Shown here one piece after another: positions 40,971 through 52,928 of a DNA stretch of 64,000 nucleotides. Each line of letters begins with the position of its first letter. Position 1 is the stretch's first letter. The stretch spans positions 507,656,001-507,720,000 of the forward strand of contig NW_027362771.1 of NCBI RefSeq assembly GCF_046119375.1, in the 5' to 3' direction. A model generated the notes under the pieces. That model searched no databases, had not been told where the DNA came from, and saw only the letters and a program-made list of their open reading frames with translations. Source of the DNA: Phyllobates terribilis. Lineage: Eukaryota. The translations under genes were made by a program, and so were the position numbers.

Positions 40971-42136
40971 TGTAGCGCCGGCGTCCCTGCCCTCTGCTAG
41001 GCAGGGACGCTGTTCCCCTCACCCCTCTGCTCCGAGCCCGGCGTCCTCCTCCCGCTCTGCTGGCAGCGCACGCTCCTTCCCGGCCACTGTGCTTAGGGCG
41101 CGCGCTCCCTCCCTCTTAAAGGGGCCGCGCGCGCCGTCCTAAGGAGTCCCCGGCCAATGGCCGGAGGACTTCACCATATTTAAGGCACCTCCTCCAAAAT
41201 GGAGGTGCCCGAGCAATGTTGTTGCACTGTTCACTACTCTGCTTCAGCCCTCAGGTCCCGTTGCCAGTTACCTGCCAGAAACCTGCCAGTTTGCTGTCTG
41301 TTTCCTGCCTGACATTCCTCCTACCTGCTTGCTAGCCTGAGGTCCGACGGTCTGCCTTCCTACTCCTGTCAGTCTGTCTATGGACCAGCTTGCCCGCTCA
41401 CCTGGGAGCGCACATCTGCTACCTGCCTGCTAGCCTACCTGGAGGCTCTGCCGTCACGTGCTGTGACCTCCTGCCATTCCAGAGACTCCTGCCCGCTCAC
41501 CTGGGAGCGCTCATCTGCTGCCTGTCTGCTAGCCTACCTGGAGGCTCCGCCGTCACGTGCTGTGACCACCTGCCATTCCAGAGACTCCTGCCCGCTCACC
41601 TGGGAGCGCTCATCTGCTGCCTGTCTGTTGGCCTACCTGGAGGCTCCGCCGTCACATGCTGTGACCACCCGTTTATCCAGAGACTCTCGCTTGCTCACCT
41701 GGGGGCACACATCTACCATCTGCCTGCTAGCCTACCTGGAGGCTCAGCCATTACAGGTCGTACCTACCCTTTACCCAGAGACTGCCCCGGTCACTTGCCG
41801 TGACCTCCTGCCCGTTCATCCAGAGACTGCCCCGGTCACTTGCTGTGACCCCCTGCCCGTTCATCCAGAGACTGCCCCGGTCACTTGCCGTGACCCCCTG
41901 CCCGTTCATCCAGAGACTGCCCCGGTCACTTGCCGTGACCCCCTGCCCGTTCATCCAGAGACTACCCCGGTCCCTTGCCGTGACCTCCAGCCCGTTCACC
42001 CAGAGACTGTCCCGGTCACCTGCTGTGACTGCCTGCCCGTCTTCCCTGGTCGCCACCCGCTCCCTTACAAGGACCGCCCCCTTGTATAGTAGCTCAGAGG
42101 TTCCGCCTCCCAGACTCGTTACAGTTTGCTCGGGCC

Positions 42137-43080: not shown

Positions 43081-46000
43081 GTTCGCTCAGAGAGGTCGAC
43101 CTAGACAAGAATAAATCCTCTCCATCTCTGCTGCTGTCAGTCTCAATTATCTGCGGGGAGAATCGTTATTTCGAACTAGCCCAACTTGACTCTGGAGCGG
43201 CCGGGAATCTTATTTCACAGGCCCTGGTAGAAAAATACCGCATTCCCACCAAACCTCTGGCTATACCATTATCTGTCGCTGCTGTGGATGGGGGCCTCTT
43301 ACCACGTCCCATCCAACTCATCACCGAATCCGTAACTTTGCAGGTGGGAATGCTGCATTCTGAGAGCATCTCTTTTCATGTTCTGCCTGGACTCTCTCAC
43401 GCCCTCTTACTAGGTCTACCTTGGCTCCAGAGACATGCACCCGTGCTTGACTGGCAGACCGGAGAAGTCCTTCGCTGGGGACAGGACTGTCATAAGACTT
43501 GTTTGGTTCCTGTTCATCCCGCCCGTCCTTCTCCTACCCCAACTAATCTACCTGGACTTCCGATTCCCTATTGGTCATTTGCTGATGTCTTTAATAAAAA
43601 GGAGGCAGAGACATTACCCCCTCATAGACCATACGACTGTCCTATCGACCTGTTACCCGGTACTACGCCTCCCCGTGGGCGTATTTACCCATTGTCCGCT
43701 GCTGAGACCCGGTCGATGTCCGAATATATTGAGGAGAATTTGGCCAGGGGATTCATCCGGAAATCTACCTCCCCGGCGGGAGCAGGCTTCTTTTTCGTAA
43801 AAAAAGAAGGACGGCTCTCTCCGTCCCTGTATAGACTATAGAGGCCTTAACCAGATCACGGTGAAGAATAAGTACCCCCTTCCGCTCATTCCAGAATTAT
43901 TTGATCGTCTGAGGGGGGCTAGAATCTTCACCAAACTGGACCTCCGTGGGGCGTACAACCTGGTCCGTATCCGTCAAGGGGATGAATGGAAGACTGCATT
44001 CAACACCCGGGACGGCCACTATGAATATCTGGTAATGCCCTTTGGTCTCTGTAACGCTCCTGCCGTCTTTCAAGAGTTGGTCAATGACATCTTCCGGGAC
44101 CTTCTCTACTCCTGCGTAGTGGTGTACCTGGACGACATCTTGGTCTTCTCTCCGGATCTCCAGACTCACCGGAGAGACGTTCGTCAGGTCCTGCTCAGGC
44201 TCAGGCAGAATCACCTCTTCGCTAAATATGAGAAGTGCCTCTTTGAGCAGACCTCGCTTCCGTTTTTGGGCTACATTATTTCTCAGACCGGCCTACGAAT
44301 GGATCCAGAGAAACTGTCTGCCATCGAGAAATGGCCCCGACCGGAGGGGTTGAAGGCCATTCAGCGGTTCCTGGGCTTCGCCAACTACTACCGCCTCTTC
44401 ATACCGCACTTCTCTTCCCGGACTGCCCCAATTTCCGCGCTCACCCGTAAGGGCACTAATCCCAGAGAGTGGCCGCCCGAAGCAGAGGAGGCCTTTCTTT
44501 CCTTAAAACAGGCCTTCTCTTCCGCCCCGGTGCTGCATCGCCCAGATGGCAACAAGCAGTTCTTCCTGGAGGTTGACGCCTCCTCCTCTGGAGCCGGAGC
44601 GGTACTTACCCAAAAATCATCTTCCGGGAGAATGGTAACTTGTGGCTTCTTCTCCAAACTCTTCTGAGCGCAACTATTCCATAGGAGATCGAGAGTTATT
44701 GGCCATCAAGCTGGCATTGGAGGAGTGGCGTTACCTGCTCGAAGGGGCTCTTCACCCGGTAATTTACACTGACCACAAGAACTTGGCTTACCTCCAGCAT
44801 GCCCAGAGACTTAACCCGCGCCAAGCTCGGTGGTCCTTGTTTTTTGCTCGCTTTGATTTTATTCTTCATTTTCGCCCGGCTGACAAAAACATCAAGGCGG
44901 ACGCCTTGTCCCGATCCTTTCTGGTGTCTGATCTCGAGGAAGAACCGAAACACATCATCGATCCCGCCAGAGTAATGCAGGTGGCTCCCGTGAGTCTAAA
45001 TCGTCTCCCTCCCGGTAAGACGTTCGTATCAGTACCTGATCGGGAGAAGATCCTACACTGGGGTCACTCGTCTAAACTAGCTGGCCACGCCGGTCAGAAA
45101 AAGACCCTCCAGCTTATTACCCGGCACTACTGGTGGCCTACCCTGCACAAGGACGTAATAGACTTTGTTTCTGCCTGTGTGTCCTGCGCTCGCAACAAGG
45201 TTCCGAGACATCTGCCAGCCGGTCGCCTCCTTCCGCTCCCAGTACCTGCTGCCCCCTGGCAGCATATAGCAATGGACTTTATAACTGATCTCCCCGTCTC
45301 TGCCGGTTGTACGGTCATTTGGGTGGTCGCTGACCGCTTTTCCAAGATGGCTCATTTCGTTCCCCTGCCAGGCCTCCCGTCTGCACCCGAGCTGGCTAAA
45401 GACTTTATCCGCCACATCTTCCGTCTTCATGGCCTGCCCCTCCACATCGTGTCGGATCGTGGGGTACAGTTCACCTCACGCTTCTGGAGAGCCACTTGTA
45501 AACTGCTAGACGTCACCCTGGACTTCTCCTCCGCTTACCACCCACAGTCTAATGGTCAAGTGGAGCGGATCAATCAGAACCTGACCAGTTACCTCCGGCA
45601 CTTCGTTAATGCCCACCATTCAGACTGGGTGGATCTCCTGCCATGGGCCGAATTTTCTTACAACAATCACGAGAGCGAATCTTCCTCCAAATCCCCGTTT
45701 TTTGTTGTCTTCGGTCAGCATCCTCGGATCCCATTTCCCGTCTCCACCTCGGTGGACAATCCGGCTGCGGAATCTCTTGTTAACAAATTTTCCTCCATAT
45801 GGGAGAGTACCCGATCCGCACTCCTTCTGTCATCCGAGCGTATGAAAAGACATGCTGACAAAAAACGTCTGGATCCTCCTCAATTCCGTCCAGGGGATAA
45901 GGTCTGGCTCTCGTCCAAGTATGTCCGGCTCAAGATTCCTTCCTATAAGTTAGGGCCTCGGTTCATCGGTCCTCTGGAGGTCATCAGTCAGATCAACCCG

Positions 46001-46540
46001 GTGGCCTATAAATTGAAACTCCCGGCCAACTTGCGGATCCCTAACTCCTTCCATGTATCTCTCCTCAAACCTGTGGTACTTAACTCTTTTTCCAAGTCTA
46101 CAGGTACGCCTCCTGCTCCGGTTTCCGCTGAAAACGAATTTGAGGTAGAGAACTTTCTGGCCACCAAAAGGGTAAGAGGGAAGACCTTTTTTCTAGTAGA
46201 TTGGAAGGGGTTTGGTCCTGAAGAGAGAACGTGGGAGCCCCGGGAGAACATCCATGCCCCTCTCATCCTAGCTAAATTTCTCTCTGGCCTAAAAAAGGGG
46301 GGGCCTAAAGGGGGGGGGGGTACTGTAGCGCCGGCGTCCCTGCCCTCTGCTAGGCAGGGATGCTGTTCCCCTCACCCCTCTGCTCCGAGCCCGGCGTCCT
46401 CCTCCCGCTCTGCTGGCAGTGCGCGCTCCTTCCCGGCCACTGTGCTTAGGGCGCGCGCGCGCTCCCTCCATCTTAAAGGGGCCGCGCGCGCCGTCCTAAG
46501 GAGTCCCCGGCCAATGGCTGGAGGACTTCACCATATTTAA
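43062..46540 (+). CDS. Gypsy pol (PR-RT-RH-IN-chromo) in the -1 frame to gag, with two disruptions
   Basis: Open from 43062 through LDSGA. There is a +1 A in the A run at ~43800 and a small deletion at ~44660. ORFs 43284-43841, 43861-44667 and 44642-46540. Confidence 0.9.
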
Positions 46541-47545
46541 GGCACCTCCTCCAAAATGGAGGTGCCCGAGCAATGTTGTTGCACTGTTCACTACTCTGCT
46601 TCAGCCCTCAGGTCCCGTTGCCAGTTACCTGCCAGAAACCTGCCAGTTTGCTGTCTGTTTCCTGCCTGACATTCCTCCTACCTGCTTGCTAGCCTGAGGT
46701 CCGACGGTCTGCCTTCCTACTCCTGTCAGTCTGTCTATGGACCAGCTTGCCCGCTCACCTGGGAGCGCACATCTGCTACCTGCCTGCTAGCCTACCTGGA
46801 GGCTCCGCCGTCACGTGCTGTGACCACCTGCCATTCCAGAGACTCCTGCCCGCTCACCTGGGAGCGCTCATCTGCTGCCTGTCTGCTAGCCTACCTGGAG
46901 GCTCCGCCGTCACGTGCTGTGACCACCTGCCATTCCAGAGACTCCTGCCCGCTCACCTGGGAGCGCTCATCTGCTGCCTGTCTGTTGGCCTACCTGGAGG
47001 CTCCGCCGTCACATGCTGTGACCACCCATTTATCCAGAGACTCTCGCTTGCTCACCTGGGAGCACACATCTACCATCTGCCTGCTAGCCTACCTGGAGGC
47101 TCAGCCATCACAGGTCGTACCTACCCTTTACCCAGAGACTGCCCCGGTCACTTGCCGTGACCTCCTGCCCGTTCATCCAGAGACTGCCCCGGTCACTTGC
47201 CGTGACCCCCTGTCCGTTCATCCAGAGACTGCCCCAGTCACTTGCCGTGACCCCCTGCCCGTTCATCCAGAGACTGCCCCGGTCACTTGCCGTGACCCCC
47301 TGCCCGTTCATCCAGAGACTACCCTGGTCCCTTGCCGTGACCTCCAGCCCGTTCACCCAGAGACTGTCCCGGTCACCTGCTGTGACTGCCTGCCCGTCTT
47401 CCCTGGTCGCCACCCGCTCCCTTACAAGGACCGCCCCCTTGTATAGTAGCTCAGAGGTTCCGCCTCCCAGACCCGTTACAATAGCGATCAGATTGCTGGA
47501 TGACCTCTGCAGGATGATGTTGGGCTTTTCTTCTATCCTGCAGCA

Positions 47546-48807: not shown

Positions 48808-48936
48808 GCTGTGTAAAAGCAGCGACACGTGCAGCCGCGGCGGCTGCAACTGCAAGGCCGAGCACGCCAAAACTACTTGTCGAGTACCCGAGCGTACTCG
48901 TTTAAAGGATTAAACGAGCACGCTCACTCCTCACTA

Positions 48937-51900
48937 ATTAACATACATAATAAATAATACATAATGAAACAGTTTGTCATTCTAATACAGAACATTACAA
49001 AAACATTTTTACAAAACAATGGGCATATCCAACTTGTCATTCAGTCCCAGTGGACCTTGGGCATTTGTATTTAAAATCAATCTAGCTTCTTTTCTCAACA
49101 GCATTAAATTGTGATTGCCTCCTCTTTTAGGAAAATTTACTTTAGCTATCACTGCAAACCGCAAGAGATCAGGATTACTCCCATGAACCTCTTTCATGTG
49201 TTTTATTAACCTGGGTGCTCCCTTGCCAGAGGTGATAGAATTATAATGCTCCCTAAATCTCACAAACAGGGGGAGTATTGTTTTTCCTACATAAAAGAAT
49301 TTACTGGGACAAAAGATTACGTAAACTATATGTGTGGTTCTGCAAGAAATGAAATAATTGACACGGCACTCTACAGCTCCCAGCTGAAGTACACTGTCAG
49401 TCAGGTGTAGATGGTAAAATTACCCACCGGGAATGTGTCTTTCTAACCATTTTTTATTGTCCTCCTCCAATCTATTCCTAACTAATAAGTCTTTCAGATT
49501 TTTACATCTTTTGTACGACATAACAGGTTTTATTATCGCTCTATCACTTTCTGGTAAACGCCAATTTCTACGTACTGCCGATTTAATAATTTTGTCCATA
49601 TTAGTATGTTTAAAACTGAACACAAATTTACCCATTTTTTTCTGCATTTGATTCTTATTAAAAATCAGCTCATGTTGTGAATTTTCTGCTGCTCTTTCTA
49701 AAAGTTGAGAAAGTTAGATTTCAGCTCCATAGCTTGTTTTTGAAATGTTTCCTCGTTGTTATTGATTTTGCGTATCCGCAACAGCGAATTAGTAGCAGTT
49801 GGTTTTTTTGTAGGTTTCTGTGTGAATCCTACCGTCTTTAACATCCAAGAACTCTAATGTAATACCGCCCCAATTAGCAGTAAAACTCATATTTTCGGTG
49901 TTGCTCTCATTTTAAATATTTTACAAAACCTGCAAAATCTTCCCGTCGTCCTGCCCATACAATAAATACGTCATCCACATATCTAAAGTATGCACGGACG
50001 TATTTAATGTAAGGGTTATTGATATTAGTGATGTATTTTTCTTCAAAAGTTGCCAAGAACAGATTTGCAGAAGTCCATGCGACAGGTGTCCCCATTGCTG
50101 TCCTGACTTCTTGTTGGTACCATTTTTTTACCAAATTTAAATGAATTGTGGGACAACACAAAATCCAGTGCTTCAGTCACAAAATTAATGAAATCTTGTT
50201 CCTTATTCAAGTTTTCCAATATAGTTCTTATTGCCTCTATACCTATTTTTTTGCGGGATACAGGTATACAAGGTTTCAATATCTATTGAGGCAAGAGTAA
50301 AATCCTCCTGCCAATCTATGGTGTACAAAGCTTTTAAAAAATCTCCAGTATCTTTCAGATATAAAGGGACACTTATTAGAATGGGTCGCAGTAACCAATC
50401 TAGATACTTTGAGAGAGGTTCTGTAATAGACCCAATCCCCGACGGGCGTCAAGGATTTGTGGAGTTTTGAAATGTAGTACCAATAACGTTTATATGGATA
50501 CATGGAGTAATTTGGTAACTGTTTTATTGGACCGTATCCCTTTCTCTAGCTGTTGTCTTAGAAATGTACGCCGTTGATTTTTATACCTGAGTTGGGTCAT
50601 ATTTCAATACGGCATAAGTTCTGTCGTCAGAAAGCGGTCTACTAGCCTCTCGTAAATAATCCTCTTTCCTTAGTAGTACGATATTGCCGCCTTTTCTCAC
50701 TACTGTATCAAACCAGGATTTAATTTCATTTAAGGCTTTTATTTCTCCTTCAGATAGAATGCTAATAGATTTGTTATAAACACAGCTTCCACGTCTTTAA
50801 TGACTCTGTCCTGAAATAAATCAATAGTATTGCCTGGACTAATATGCGGCATGTACGTGGATTTTACTCCCCCTGTGAAGAATTGAGAAATAGGTGTAGC
50901 GGAGGCTACTCTGTGCTCCACATTTTCGGGGTCTTCTATGCTCATCAGTAGATCTACCTCTATCGGATCTATATAAGTAGCAATACTGAAACCTAGGGGA
51001 TTAGGAGTTACCGGACTCTCGCCTACCAGAGATTTTTTAGTATCATTTTTCTGTTGTTTAAAAGCCTTAAAAAGATATAATTTCCTAAAATCTATAAATA
51101 ACTATTTTGATTTCAGTGATGTCAAAAGAGTCTGGTATACAAAAATGTAATCTTTTAGATAATAATGTCATATGGTTCTTATTGAGCTGGTGGTCCGTGA
51201 GATTTATAACTTTGTCTAGTTTCTCCATGAGACTTGTTTCCACTACTTCCAGGACCTCCTTCCCCCCTCCTCTTCTGGTCCGTTTCCTAAAGGGAGTGAT
51301 GTTAGATGTTGAAGTATCCATCTCCAAAAATTCCATGTTCCGATCCGCCATACTGGCGCTAGAGTCTGAGTCGGTCGTCCATCCAGCTCTATTAGACCGC
51401 TTTCTTTTAAAGAATTTGGATGGTCTATTCCTGTTTGCCAATTTATTCCTGTTACTCTGTCTGTTCCTATTGTTCACATTTTTATTCCAGGAGAAAACCT
51501 GTGCATTGTCAGTCATTTTTGTCCCCAAAAAATTTTTTTTTCCTCTCCTTGATCTCTGCTTGCAGTGGGATTAACTTATTGTCCAATTTTGTCAAGACAG
51601 ATTTAAATTGATTCTCCATGTGCCTCATTTTTAATTCTGCTTTAGCTTTTTCCATCTCCGTCATTAAGGACAAATATTCGGTTTCATTTTGTAGTAACAC
51701 TAGTCTCAGAAATCTTTGCGAGTATTCCAAATGGATTTGCTCCCACTCTTTACAGAACTCGGCATGGTCCTGAAATTGGGAGATTTCCTTAAAAATCCAA
51801 AGACCACGTGGGACGTGTGCTGATTCGTCATATGCTTTGTGACTCAATAGTCCAAAATAATCTAATTTCTTTCTCTGATAAGACATTAATTTTATTTTCC

Positions 51901-52168
51901 AAATTTCTGGTGCCCATGCTTTGAATATCCTCTTTGATGTTACAGTCCATGAAAAACAACCCCGCATCCTCCCTTCCTGCCATTAAACCGCCTTTGACCG
52001 GTGGCATATCTGAGGGTCCACAGATCGGGTTATCCATATTTGGAACAGATATATTCCCCTTTGGTTCGTTGTGCCTAGCTTCTAAGAAAAAAACGTACCT
52101 GATTTAAGTGAGGGTTGTTAAATGGACGACGGACGTTTCGCATCTGGTCTGATGCTTCTACGAGTCCA
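48937..52168 (-). mobile_element. Penelope-like retroelement (RT plus GIY-YIG, Neptune-like long N-terminus), degenerate
   Basis: Minus frames from ATG 52037: N-terminal domain with HVPRGLWIFK...FCKEWEQI, then RT (ASIDIETLYTCIP, TAMGT, YFRYVDDVFIVW), then GIY-YIG (HIVYVIFCPSKFFYVGKT...VRFREH...GLND), stop at 49009. Several frameshifts. Confidence 0.9.
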
Positions 52169-52210
52169 GGTAGAAGTGTCAGACCAGACCCGAAACTGTT
52201 GTCGTCCATT
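52121..52210. ncRNA. Two inverted hammerhead-ribozyme-like motifs at the PLE 5' end
   Basis: Minus copy (52168-52121): UGGAC-UCGUAGAA-GCAUC(AGACCA)GAUGC-GAAACGUCCGUC-GUCCA. Plus copy (52170-52210): GUAGAA-GUGUC(AGACCA)GACCC-GAAACUGUUGUC-GUCCA. Confidence 0.55.
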
Positions 52211-52562
52211 GATTTCCCCGCACGCCTCCTGCATGTCCCGTGAATCGCAATAAAGGACTGTTTTTAGGAAATGGTGAGTGCTGTTTTTCTTTGTCCTGGA
52301 TGAACTGCAATACTAAACTTGCTATGCACCACAGCACTCCTTTTTTTTTTGATACCGCATTGGTTCACAGAAGGGTTAAGTGATTTGTAATGGTATGGTG
52401 CCGAAGACTATCTTACCATTATTGTTAGGATACCCTTTTTCTTATAAGTTTGTCGTGAACTTTGTGTTTTTTGCGCCCTACTATTTTTATATACAATAAA
52501 ATTATATATTTTCTGGTTTATTTTTCTATGTGGTCATTTAGTCTGTGTAGTATGTTATGTAC
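52169..52562 (+). mobile_element. Inverted pseudo-LTR of a related Penelope-like element
   Basis: The hammerhead-like motif is followed by AATAAA (52249), a GTGAGT donor-like site and a T-rich tail, in the opposite orientation to the PLE ORF. Confidence 0.5.
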
Positions 52563-52584: not shown

Positions 52585-52928
52585 AAGGGTTGTCTGGTCT
52601 AAATTGAGCAAGTCTGCAGTCACGCTGTGTGACTGCAGATTTATCAATCCTCCCAGCACATGCACTGTGAGGATTCGCTGGGTATGTATGCATTATACAT
52701 ACTCCAGGCCAGAGCCCGATTAGTGGGCACGGCCTCATTCTATACACTCGTATGGAGTGAGGCCACGCTGCATCTGGCCGGGAGTATGTATAGCGCATAC
52801 ATACCCGCCGGTCCTGGCTCAGGAACTGGCGAATGCTCGCAGTGCAGAGTGCGTATGCTGCAGGGATTCATAAGTCTGCAGTCACACACAGTGACCGCAG
52901 ACTTATCGATTGAGACCGGACAACCCCT
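52585..52928. mobile_element. T2/Kolobok-type MITE
   Basis: TTAA|AAGGGTTGTCTGGTCT ... ACCGGACAACCCCT|TTAA, with internal inverted arms. Confidence 0.75.

What the first reader, a model, noticed from the sequence alone, without database searches (positions are those of the whole stretch)
52121..52210. Head-to-head pair of hammerhead-like RNAs with covarying stem II and a non-canonical catalytic core
Seen: the minus copy folds as a type I hammerhead. Stem I is UGGAC/GUCCA, the core is UCGUAGAA where CUGANGA(A) is expected, stem II is GCAUC/GAUGC with loop AGACCA, then GAAA, a minimal stem III ACG/CGU and a GUC cleavage triplet. The plus copy keeps GUAGAAG, loop AGACCA, CGAAAC and GUCGUCCAUU but swaps stem II to G(U)GUC/GACCC, which looks like compensatory change. 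G5, G8, A9, G12, A13 and A14 are retained while positions 3, 4 and 6 deviate. Established: PLEs carry minimal hammerheads with short stem III, some cleaving as dimers. Inference: a variant-core ribozyme family shared by two subfamilies. A read-through transcript would fold the 90 nt into one long hairpin that masks both ribozymes, a possible conformational switch or dsRNA source.
Basis: partly seen in the sequence, partly recalled or inferred. Interest (0 to 1): 0.72.

Follow-up and report, generated by a model that had tools for sequence, protein, structure and literature searches.

The report
Decayed Penelope hammerhead remnant, inverted duplicate
This is the worn-out hammerhead-ribozyme motif at the front of a dead Penelope-like jumping gene in a frog, sitting next to a 41-base back-to-front copy of itself of the kind these elements often leave when they insert; nothing shows it is a working or new kind of ribozyme.

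Summary
The sequence features are real. An imperfect inverted repeat lies at 52108-52223; its convincingly homologous core is 41 nt per arm, 52121-52161 and 52170-52210.

The minus arm (52168-52123) is the only place in the window that fits a relaxed type I hammerhead outline (0.01 expected by chance). It lies in sense 90 nt upstream of the ATG of a degenerate minus-strand Penelope-like element (PLE), which is where PLE hammerheads sit.

Three results argue against a working or new ribozyme:
- Three of the four U-turn bases differ (UCGU instead of CUGA). Published saturation mutagenesis found such changes low in activity.
- No Rfam hammerhead model matches, even at E<=10.
- The plus arm lacks stem I and positions 3-4 and does not fold alone.

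The claimed stem II covariation is one compensated pair plus one broken pair. At least half of the differences between the arms are CpG-type transitions.

The motif is essentially single-copy in DNA contigs at 80% likeness or more, and no RNA contig covers it.

My best reading is a decayed PLE hammerhead remnant plus an inverted duplicate made at integration, a documented PLE hallmark. The scan has noted other PLE hammerhead variants elsewhere in this frog genome.

The parts
52123..52168 (-). Minus hammerhead-like motif. Stem I 52168-52164 / 52127-52123; 5' box UCGUAGA 52163-52157; bulged A 52156; stem II plus loop 52155-52140; GAAA 52139-52136; helix III region 52135-52129; C17 at 52128. The predicted cut would fall between 52128 and 52127.
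   Evidence: It is the only hit in the window to a relaxed type I descriptor, with 0.01 expected. The fold forms stems I and II. No Rfam hammerhead model matches.
52170..52210 (+). Plus arm: an inverted 41-nt duplicate running from G5 to 7 nt past the would-be cut site (52203/52204). It lacks the stem I 5' strand and core positions 3-4.
   Evidence: It differs from the minus arm at 8 of 41 positions. It does not fold alone.
52162..52169 (-). 8-nt spacer and hairpin loop between the arms. It is non-palindromic and belongs to the minus copy, because it carries stem I 5' strand bases and positions 3-4.
   Evidence: Read directly from the sequence and from the repeat arms.
48930..52165 (-). Degenerate Penelope-like element. 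N-terminal domain 52037-51512, RT with YVDD 50757-49883, GIY-YIG-type endonuclease 49422-49009, and a short 3' UTR. There are at least 10 frame disruptions. The left end is approximate.
   Evidence: ORF map; tblastn of frog and newt relatives; sources of those relatives; weak RVT_1 hit; IVYVI..C / FYVGKT / RFREH read in the translation.
52216..52303 (.). A repeat of about 10-20 copies that abuts the plus arm. It is not part of the hammerhead-like motif.
   Evidence: Contig depth rises from about 11 to 44-101 only to the right of about 52216, and the left ends of the laid pieces lie at 52216-52232.

Best explanation
The minus copy is the hammerhead-derived motif that Penelope-like elements carry at the junction of pseudo-LTR and ORF. 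Here it heads a dead, frameshifted frog PLE on the minus strand. Its 3' half is intact: G10.1-C11.1, GAAA, a short helix III and GUC. Its 5' U-turn box reads UCGU instead of CUGA, so it most likely does not cleave.

The plus copy is not a second ribozyme gene. It is a 41-nt inverted duplicate of the element's own 5' end, made when the element integrated. The plus strand is the element's first-strand cDNA. Continued synthesis after snap-back onto itself, or a second priming on the opposite target strand, gives exactly this head-to-head structure. This step is inferred, not shown.

The two arms have since drifted apart, largely by CpG decay. At this locus the structure is a molecular fossil with no demonstrated function.
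For: Hammerhead origin and PLE context:
- The minus copy is the single hit to the relaxed hammerhead descriptor in 128 kb of sequence (both strands), with 0.01 expected.
- It lies in sense 90 nt upstream of the ATG at 52037 of a PLE that has an N-terminal domain, an RT and a GIY-YIG endonuclease. The element's relatives are frog and newt proteins.
- PLE hammerheads lie at the pLTR-ORF junction (PMC11167929, PMC4209133). The bulged base after A9 and the G10.1-C11.1 pair are PLE min-hammerhead traits (PMC4209133).

Inverted duplicate:
- A purified PLE protein cleaves and extends both target strands, and hammerhead cleavage was not needed for insertion in vitro (PMC11167929).
- Homology between the arms covers only 41 nt. 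Beyond that the differences are 1 transition to 5 transversions, as for unrelated sequence.
- At least 4 of the 8 differences inside the arms are CpG-type changes.
- There is no PLE coding sequence on the plus strand.
- The adjoining repeat at 52216-52303 does not extend into the plus arm.

No sign of activity:
- No Rfam hammerhead model matches, even at E<=10 on 111 nt.
- All single and double CUGA-turn mutants had low activity except the C:G to G:C swap (PMC9901934).
- The motif is single-copy at 80% likeness or more, and no RNA contig lies on it.
Against: - Both arms share U at position 6, so the source RNA already carried the odd box when it was copied. A lineage-wide variant is therefore possible.
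- The differences between the arms cluster in three runs, in stem II and loop III (P about 0.001 under uniform placement). That is also the pattern expected of a constrained RNA.
- The region is not CpG-depleted (observed/expected 1.08 against 0.53 for the window).
- My rough age estimate for the element (a few percent divergence, judged from the number of frame disruptions) is somewhat low for 20% divergence between the arms, unless CpG sites dominate.
- No target-site duplication and no 3' pseudo-LTR copy were found.
- No other family members could be examined.
Confidence: 0.7

Rival explanations
1. A real hammerhead variant with an altered U-turn (UCGUAGA) is conserved in two PLE subfamilies and cleaves, perhaps as a dimer or with help from the element's protein. 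The hairpin masks it in read-through RNA.
For: - Blocks GUAGAAG, UCAGACCAGA, CGAAAC and GUCGUCCAUU are identical in both arms, while stem II and loop III differ.
- One stem II pair is compensated.
- PLE hammerheads are known to vary, including core swaps such as U3-A8 (PMC4209133).
- The Anolis PLE hammerhead cleaves only with protein present (PMC11167929).
- The source RNA already had U6.
Against: - Three of the four U-turn bases are changed, and saturation mutagenesis found no rescue within two changes other than the C3:G8 swap (PMC9901934).
- No Rfam hammerhead model matches.
- The plus copy lacks stem I and positions 3-4.
- One stem II pair is broken.
- Helix III is not palindromic, so it lacks the palindromic helix III that the published dimer model relies on.
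- Only one sense copy lies on each strand.
- The motif is single-copy at 80% likeness or more and no RNA was seen.
Confidence: 0.1
2. Two separate insertions. An older, severely truncated PLE fragment of a related subfamily (the plus arm) was later hit head-on by the full-length minus element, because PLEs tend to insert into or next to existing copies. Both hammerheads are decayed.
For: [quoted passage not shown]
- Arm divergence of 20% is higher than the element's coding decay suggests.
- The sequences downstream of GUCCAUU are unrelated.
Against: - The plus arm starts exactly where the minus copy's inverted homology starts.
- It has no tail or coding sequence of its own.
- The adjoining repeat family does not carry the motif.
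- Identity in both arms at the non-consensus position 6 is easier to explain by one source.
Confidence: 0.15
3. The 41-bp hairpin itself is the functional unit, for example a small-RNA precursor or a regulatory structure.
For: The fold is very stable on both strands. Generic miRNA-precursor models match weakly (mir-607 at 33 bits).
Against: - Those scores are far below the gathering thresholds (33 against 94 bits).
- Any inverted repeat gives such matches.
- No RNA contig lies on it.
- One haplotype carries a 1-nt deletion in the arm.
Confidence: 0.03

Closest known systems
Minimal type I hammerhead motifs of Penelope-like elements (Cervera and de la Pena 2014, PMC4209133; Lunse, Weinberg and Breaker, RNA Biol, known to me only from reference lists)
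   Same: - Position in the pseudo-LTR just upstream of the PLE ORF.
- Short stem I.
- Bulged base between A9 and G10.1.
- G10.1-C11.1 pair, GAAA box, very short helix III and GUC site.
- Pairs of motifs on opposite strands close together are reported for Schistosoma.
   Different: - The 5' box is UCGUAGA instead of CUGANGA, with positions 3, 4 and 6 changed.
- Known natural core variants keep the 3-8 pair (U3-A8); here it would be U3.G8.
- Helix III and loop 3 are not palindromic.
- No Rfam hammerhead model matches.
Inverted 5'-truncated copy and 30-40-bp 'tail' of PLE insertions (Craig et al. 2021, PMC8557442; Arkhipova 2006)
   Same: A short inverted copy of the element's own sequence lies immediately next to its 5' end and forms an inverted repeat. 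Its length (41 nt) is in the range of the described extensions.
   Different: The usual drawing has the inverted copy next to a full upstream pseudo-LTR. Here the upstream pseudo-LTR is only about 40 nt, and no 3' pseudo-LTR copy is present.
Poseidon element of Anolis carolinensis (PAc; PMC11167929)
   Same: It is a vertebrate PLE with a hammerhead at the pLTR-ORF junction. Both target strands are cleaved and extended, and unprocessed RNA is used as template, which fits an uncleaved junction in both arms here.
   Different: The PAc hammerhead has the canonical C3/G8 core and overlaps the start codon. Here the motif lies 90 nt upstream and its U-turn is changed.

Membership tests
Hammerhead ribozyme (type I, PLE minimal form) | 5' core box C3 U4 G5 A6 N7 G8 A9 | tested here: not met
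   The minus copy reads U C G U A G A (52163-52157), so positions 3, 4 and 6 differ. The plus copy begins at G5 and also has U at position 6.
Hammerhead ribozyme (type I, PLE minimal form) | 3' core G12 A13 A14, A15.1-U16.1 and a cleavable U-H site | tested here: met
   GAAA at 52139-52136 followed by GUC ending at 52128 on the minus strand; GAAA at 52192-52195 followed by GUC ending at 52203 on the plus strand.
Hammerhead ribozyme (type I, PLE minimal form) | Stems I and II around the core, with a G10.1-C11.1 pair and a bulged base after A9 | tested here: inconclusive
   Minus copy: 5-bp stem I and 5-bp stem II appear in the minimum-energy fold, but z is only -1.5. Plus copy: no stem I 5' strand, stem II has a U.C mismatch, and the hammerhead fold is not predicted.
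Hammerhead ribozyme (type I, PLE minimal form) | Palindromic helix III / loop 3 that allows an active dimer | tested here: not met
   ACGUCCGU on the minus strand and ACUGUUGU on the plus strand are not palindromes. Each strand carries only one sense copy.
Hammerhead ribozyme (type I, PLE minimal form) | Match to the curated covariance models (Rfam hammerhead families) | tested here: not met
   No hammerhead family matches at gathering score, at E<=10 on 551 nt or at E<=10 on 111 nt.
Hammerhead ribozyme (type I, PLE minimal form) | Site-specific self-cleavage | not testable with these tools
   Only contigs were available, with no raw RNA reads, and no RNA contig covers the motif.
Penelope-like element | Single ORF with an RT (YxDD) related to other PLE RTs | tested here: met
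   tblastn of frog and newt relatives matches 50757-49883, YVDD is present, and RVT_1 hits weakly.
Penelope-like element | C-terminal GIY-YIG endonuclease | tested here: inconclusive
   The motifs IVYVI..C, FYVGKT and RFREH are read directly in the translation of 49422-49006. Pfam gave no hit for the final 84-aa ORF of that region (49263-49009).
Penelope-like element | Pseudo-LTRs and/or an inverted 5'-truncated copy at the 5' end | tested here: met
   The inverted 41-nt copy abuts the 5' end. No direct 3' pseudo-LTR copy of the motif was found.

The most novel reading that the evidence does not exclude
An amphibian PLE lineage that was still mobile when this copy inserted carried a hammerhead whose U-turn had changed from CUGA to UCGU. 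Either this is a new working core variant, perhaps protein-assisted, or it is a natural case of a PLE that kept transposing after its hammerhead died, which would support the view that the ribozyme is dispensable.
Probability: 0.12. Interest if true: 0.55.

Novelty: new member of a known kind. Interest (0 to 1): 0.2.

Why it matters
As it stands, this is an ordinary fossil of a known element type, and its main use is for annotation.

It would matter only if other, intact copies of this frog PLE lineage keep the same altered U-turn. That would either widen the known sequence space of the hammerhead core or show in nature that PLEs can move without a working hammerhead. The latter is suggested by in vitro work (PMC11167929) and by hammerhead-less Naiad elements (PMC8557442).

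Tried and rejected
Searches for other copies:
This blocked the family-level test.
- Pattern scans of metagenome and viral contigs: empty.
- Protein-guided scans of viral and metagenome contigs: no relatives.
- Search for a third copy or a 3' pseudo-LTR copy in the window: none.
- Canonical, U3-A8, A3-U8 and G3-C8 hammerhead descriptors across the window: no credible hits.
- Earlier-findings look-ups by sequence: blank.

Structural ideas tested and dropped:
- A target-site duplication: none clear.
- The 52216-52303 repeat as a MITE split by the PLE: no matching left arm.
- A hammerhead on the opposite strand or in another register: no GAAA box or no G8.
- Another ribozyme class: no Rfam hit of any class.

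Literature:
- The paper by Lunse et al. is not held.

Full report
**Observation.** The window holds a 54-nt imperfect inverted repeat, 52108-52161 / 52170-52223, 74% complementary with an 8-nt spacer.

- Stem I is UGGAC/GUCCA (52168-52164 / 52127-52123).
- The 5' box is UCGUAGA (52163-52157), followed by a bulged A (52156).
- Stem II is GCAUC/GAUGC with loop AGACCA (52155-52140).
- GAAA lies at 52139-52136, followed by a very short helix III.
- GUC ends at 52128.

Folded alone, the minus copy forms stems I and II, but weakly (-12.3 kcal/mol, z = -1.5). The plus copy alone does not form the hammerhead fold (z = +1.0). The whole 122 nt folds into one long hairpin on either strand (-65 and -69 kcal/mol, z about -10).

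**Is it hammerhead-derived?** Yes, for the minus copy. I wrote a relaxed type I descriptor that keeps only G5, G8, A9, G10.1-C11.1, GAAA, U-H, a 5-bp stem I and a stem II of at least 4 bp. It hits exactly once in both strands of the window, at 52168-52123, against 0.01 hits per random window.

The context fits as well. Immediately downstream on the same strand lies a degenerate Penelope-like element:
- An N-terminal domain runs from 52037 to 51512.
- An RT with YVDD runs from 50757 to 49883.
- A C-terminal GIY-YIG-type domain is read as IVYVI..C, FYVGKT and RFREH.
- The ORF is broken into at least 10 pieces.

HMMER found 15 relatives of the N-terminal domain. Four of them were looked up, and all are frog or newt proteins: Hyla sarda, Ranitomeya imitator, Dendropsophus ebraccatus and Lissotriton helveticus.

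The would-be cut site is 90 nt upstream of the ATG at 52037. PLE hammerheads sit in the pseudo-LTR at the junction with the ORF (PMC4209133; PMC11167929). The bulged base after A9 and the G10.1-C11.1 pair are listed as recurrent traits of PLE minimal hammerheads.

**Is it a working or a new ribozyme?** The evidence is against this.
- *Core.* The 5' box differs from CUGANGA at positions 3, 4 and 6, that is, three of the four bases of the CUGA uridine turn. Comprehensive single and double mutagenesis of a hammerhead found that only the C:G to G:C swap of the 3-8 pair kept activity in this motif. [quoted passage not shown]
- *Covariance models.* No Rfam hammerhead family matches at gathering score, at E<=10 on 551 nt or at E<=10 on 111 nt with the laxest filters. 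Only generic hairpin (miRNA-precursor) models match, far below their thresholds.
- *Dimer.* Helix III is not palindromic, and each strand holds only one sense copy, so the dimer route known for PLE hammerheads is not available in cis.
- *Plus copy.* It begins at G5 and has no stem I partner.

**The claimed covariation.** In the 41 nt that align convincingly (52121-52161 against 52170-52210) there are 8 differences, in three runs: stem II inner pairs on both strands, and loop III.
- Stem II pair 3 is A-U against G-C, which is compensated.
- Stem II pair 2 is C-G against U.C, which is broken.
- The 5' strand differs as CA against TG, the classic two outcomes of CpG decay.
- At least 4 of the 8 differences are of this CpG type.

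My inference is that an ancestral GCGUC/GACGC stem decaying at its CpGs keeps pairing, including G.U, in three of four outcomes. The apparent compensation therefore carries little weight.

The clustering is formally non-random under uniform placement (P about 0.001), but CpG sites explain it. Beyond position 41 the arms differ at 6 of 13 positions, with 1 transition to 5 transversions, as unrelated sequence would.

**What the plus arm is.**
- There is no PLE coding sequence on the plus strand to its right.
- Logan contigs of two DNA samples show the motif region at about single-copy depth at 80% likeness or more.
- A separate repeat of about 10-20 copies starts only at about 52216 and ends at about 52303. 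That family does not carry the motif.

The plus arm is therefore a 41-nt inverted duplicate of the minus element's own 5' end, not the head of a second subfamily. [quoted passage not shown] A purified vertebrate PLE protein cleaves and extends both target strands (PMC11167929).

Because the element is on the minus strand, its first-strand cDNA is the plus strand, synthesised from left to right. Continued synthesis after snap-back onto itself at about 52165-52169, or a second priming event on the other target strand, would write exactly 52170-52210. This step is inferred, not shown.

Both arms run through the would-be cut site by 7 identical bases. The template was therefore uncleaved, in line with the finding that unprocessed RNA is the main substrate and that hammerhead cleavage is not needed for insertion in vitro.

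**What remains open.**
- Both arms share U at position 6, so the source RNA already had the odd box. A lineage-wide variant is therefore not excluded.
- The region is not CpG-poor (observed/expected 1.08).
- Arm divergence (20%) is on the high side for the element's apparent age.
- No target-site duplication and no 3' pseudo-LTR copy were found.

**Limits of the family test.**
- Scans of metagenome and viral contigs were empty.
- The single read-laying run returned contigs only.
- No RNA contig covered 51400-52190 in the two runs guessed to be RNA. That is weak negative evidence.

**Earlier notes of this scan.** Other notes record PLE hammerhead motifs elsewhere in the same frog genome, including A3-U8 core families and 'non-canonical' cores. 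I did not test those claims. They gave me the frog lead, which one search supports.

**Verdict.** This is a decayed Penelope-like hammerhead remnant with an inverted duplicate made at integration: a new member of a known kind, of low interest. I put the probability that it represents a real variant-core lineage at about 0.1.

Noticed in passing
window:52216-52303: An 85-nt segment present in about 10-20 copies at 80% likeness or more. In one 263-nt DNA contig from elsewhere, two such segments lie inverted with 95 nt between them, so it may be the arm of a small palindromic element.
   Followed up: partly
window:52610-52904: MITE-like element with 60-nt terminal inverted repeats (52610-52669 / 52845-52904). 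Contig depth over 52588-52675 is 55,000-90,000, so it is one of the most abundant repeats in this frog. The RNA-guessed runs also hold it.
   Followed up: partly
window:41391-47397: Ty3/gypsy-type LTR retrotransposon with RT, RNase H, integrase and chromodomain ORFs at 43861-46540. The flanking regions at 41391-42040 and 46748-47397 each hold a 99-nt x3.6 and a 45-nt x5.9 tandem array, presumably inside its LTRs.
   Followed up: partly
window:52148: In one DNA sample a contig shows a 1-nt deletion in loop II of the minus motif. This is probably a haplotype difference and hints at no strong constraint.
   Followed up: no
window:52680-52806: A 34-nt inverted repeat, 91% complementary, with a 59-nt spacer, inside the MITE-like element.
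   Followed up: no
window:52272-52281: ATG followed directly by GTGAGT, a consensus 5' splice site, inside the 52216-52303 repeat. PLEs are known to carry 5' introns, but no link was shown here.
   Followed up: no
window:31476-31505 (-): A descriptor hit for an A3-U8 hammerhead box (AUGAAUA, a 5-bp stem, GAAA) without a convincing stem I or cut site. It is probably chance.
   Followed up: no
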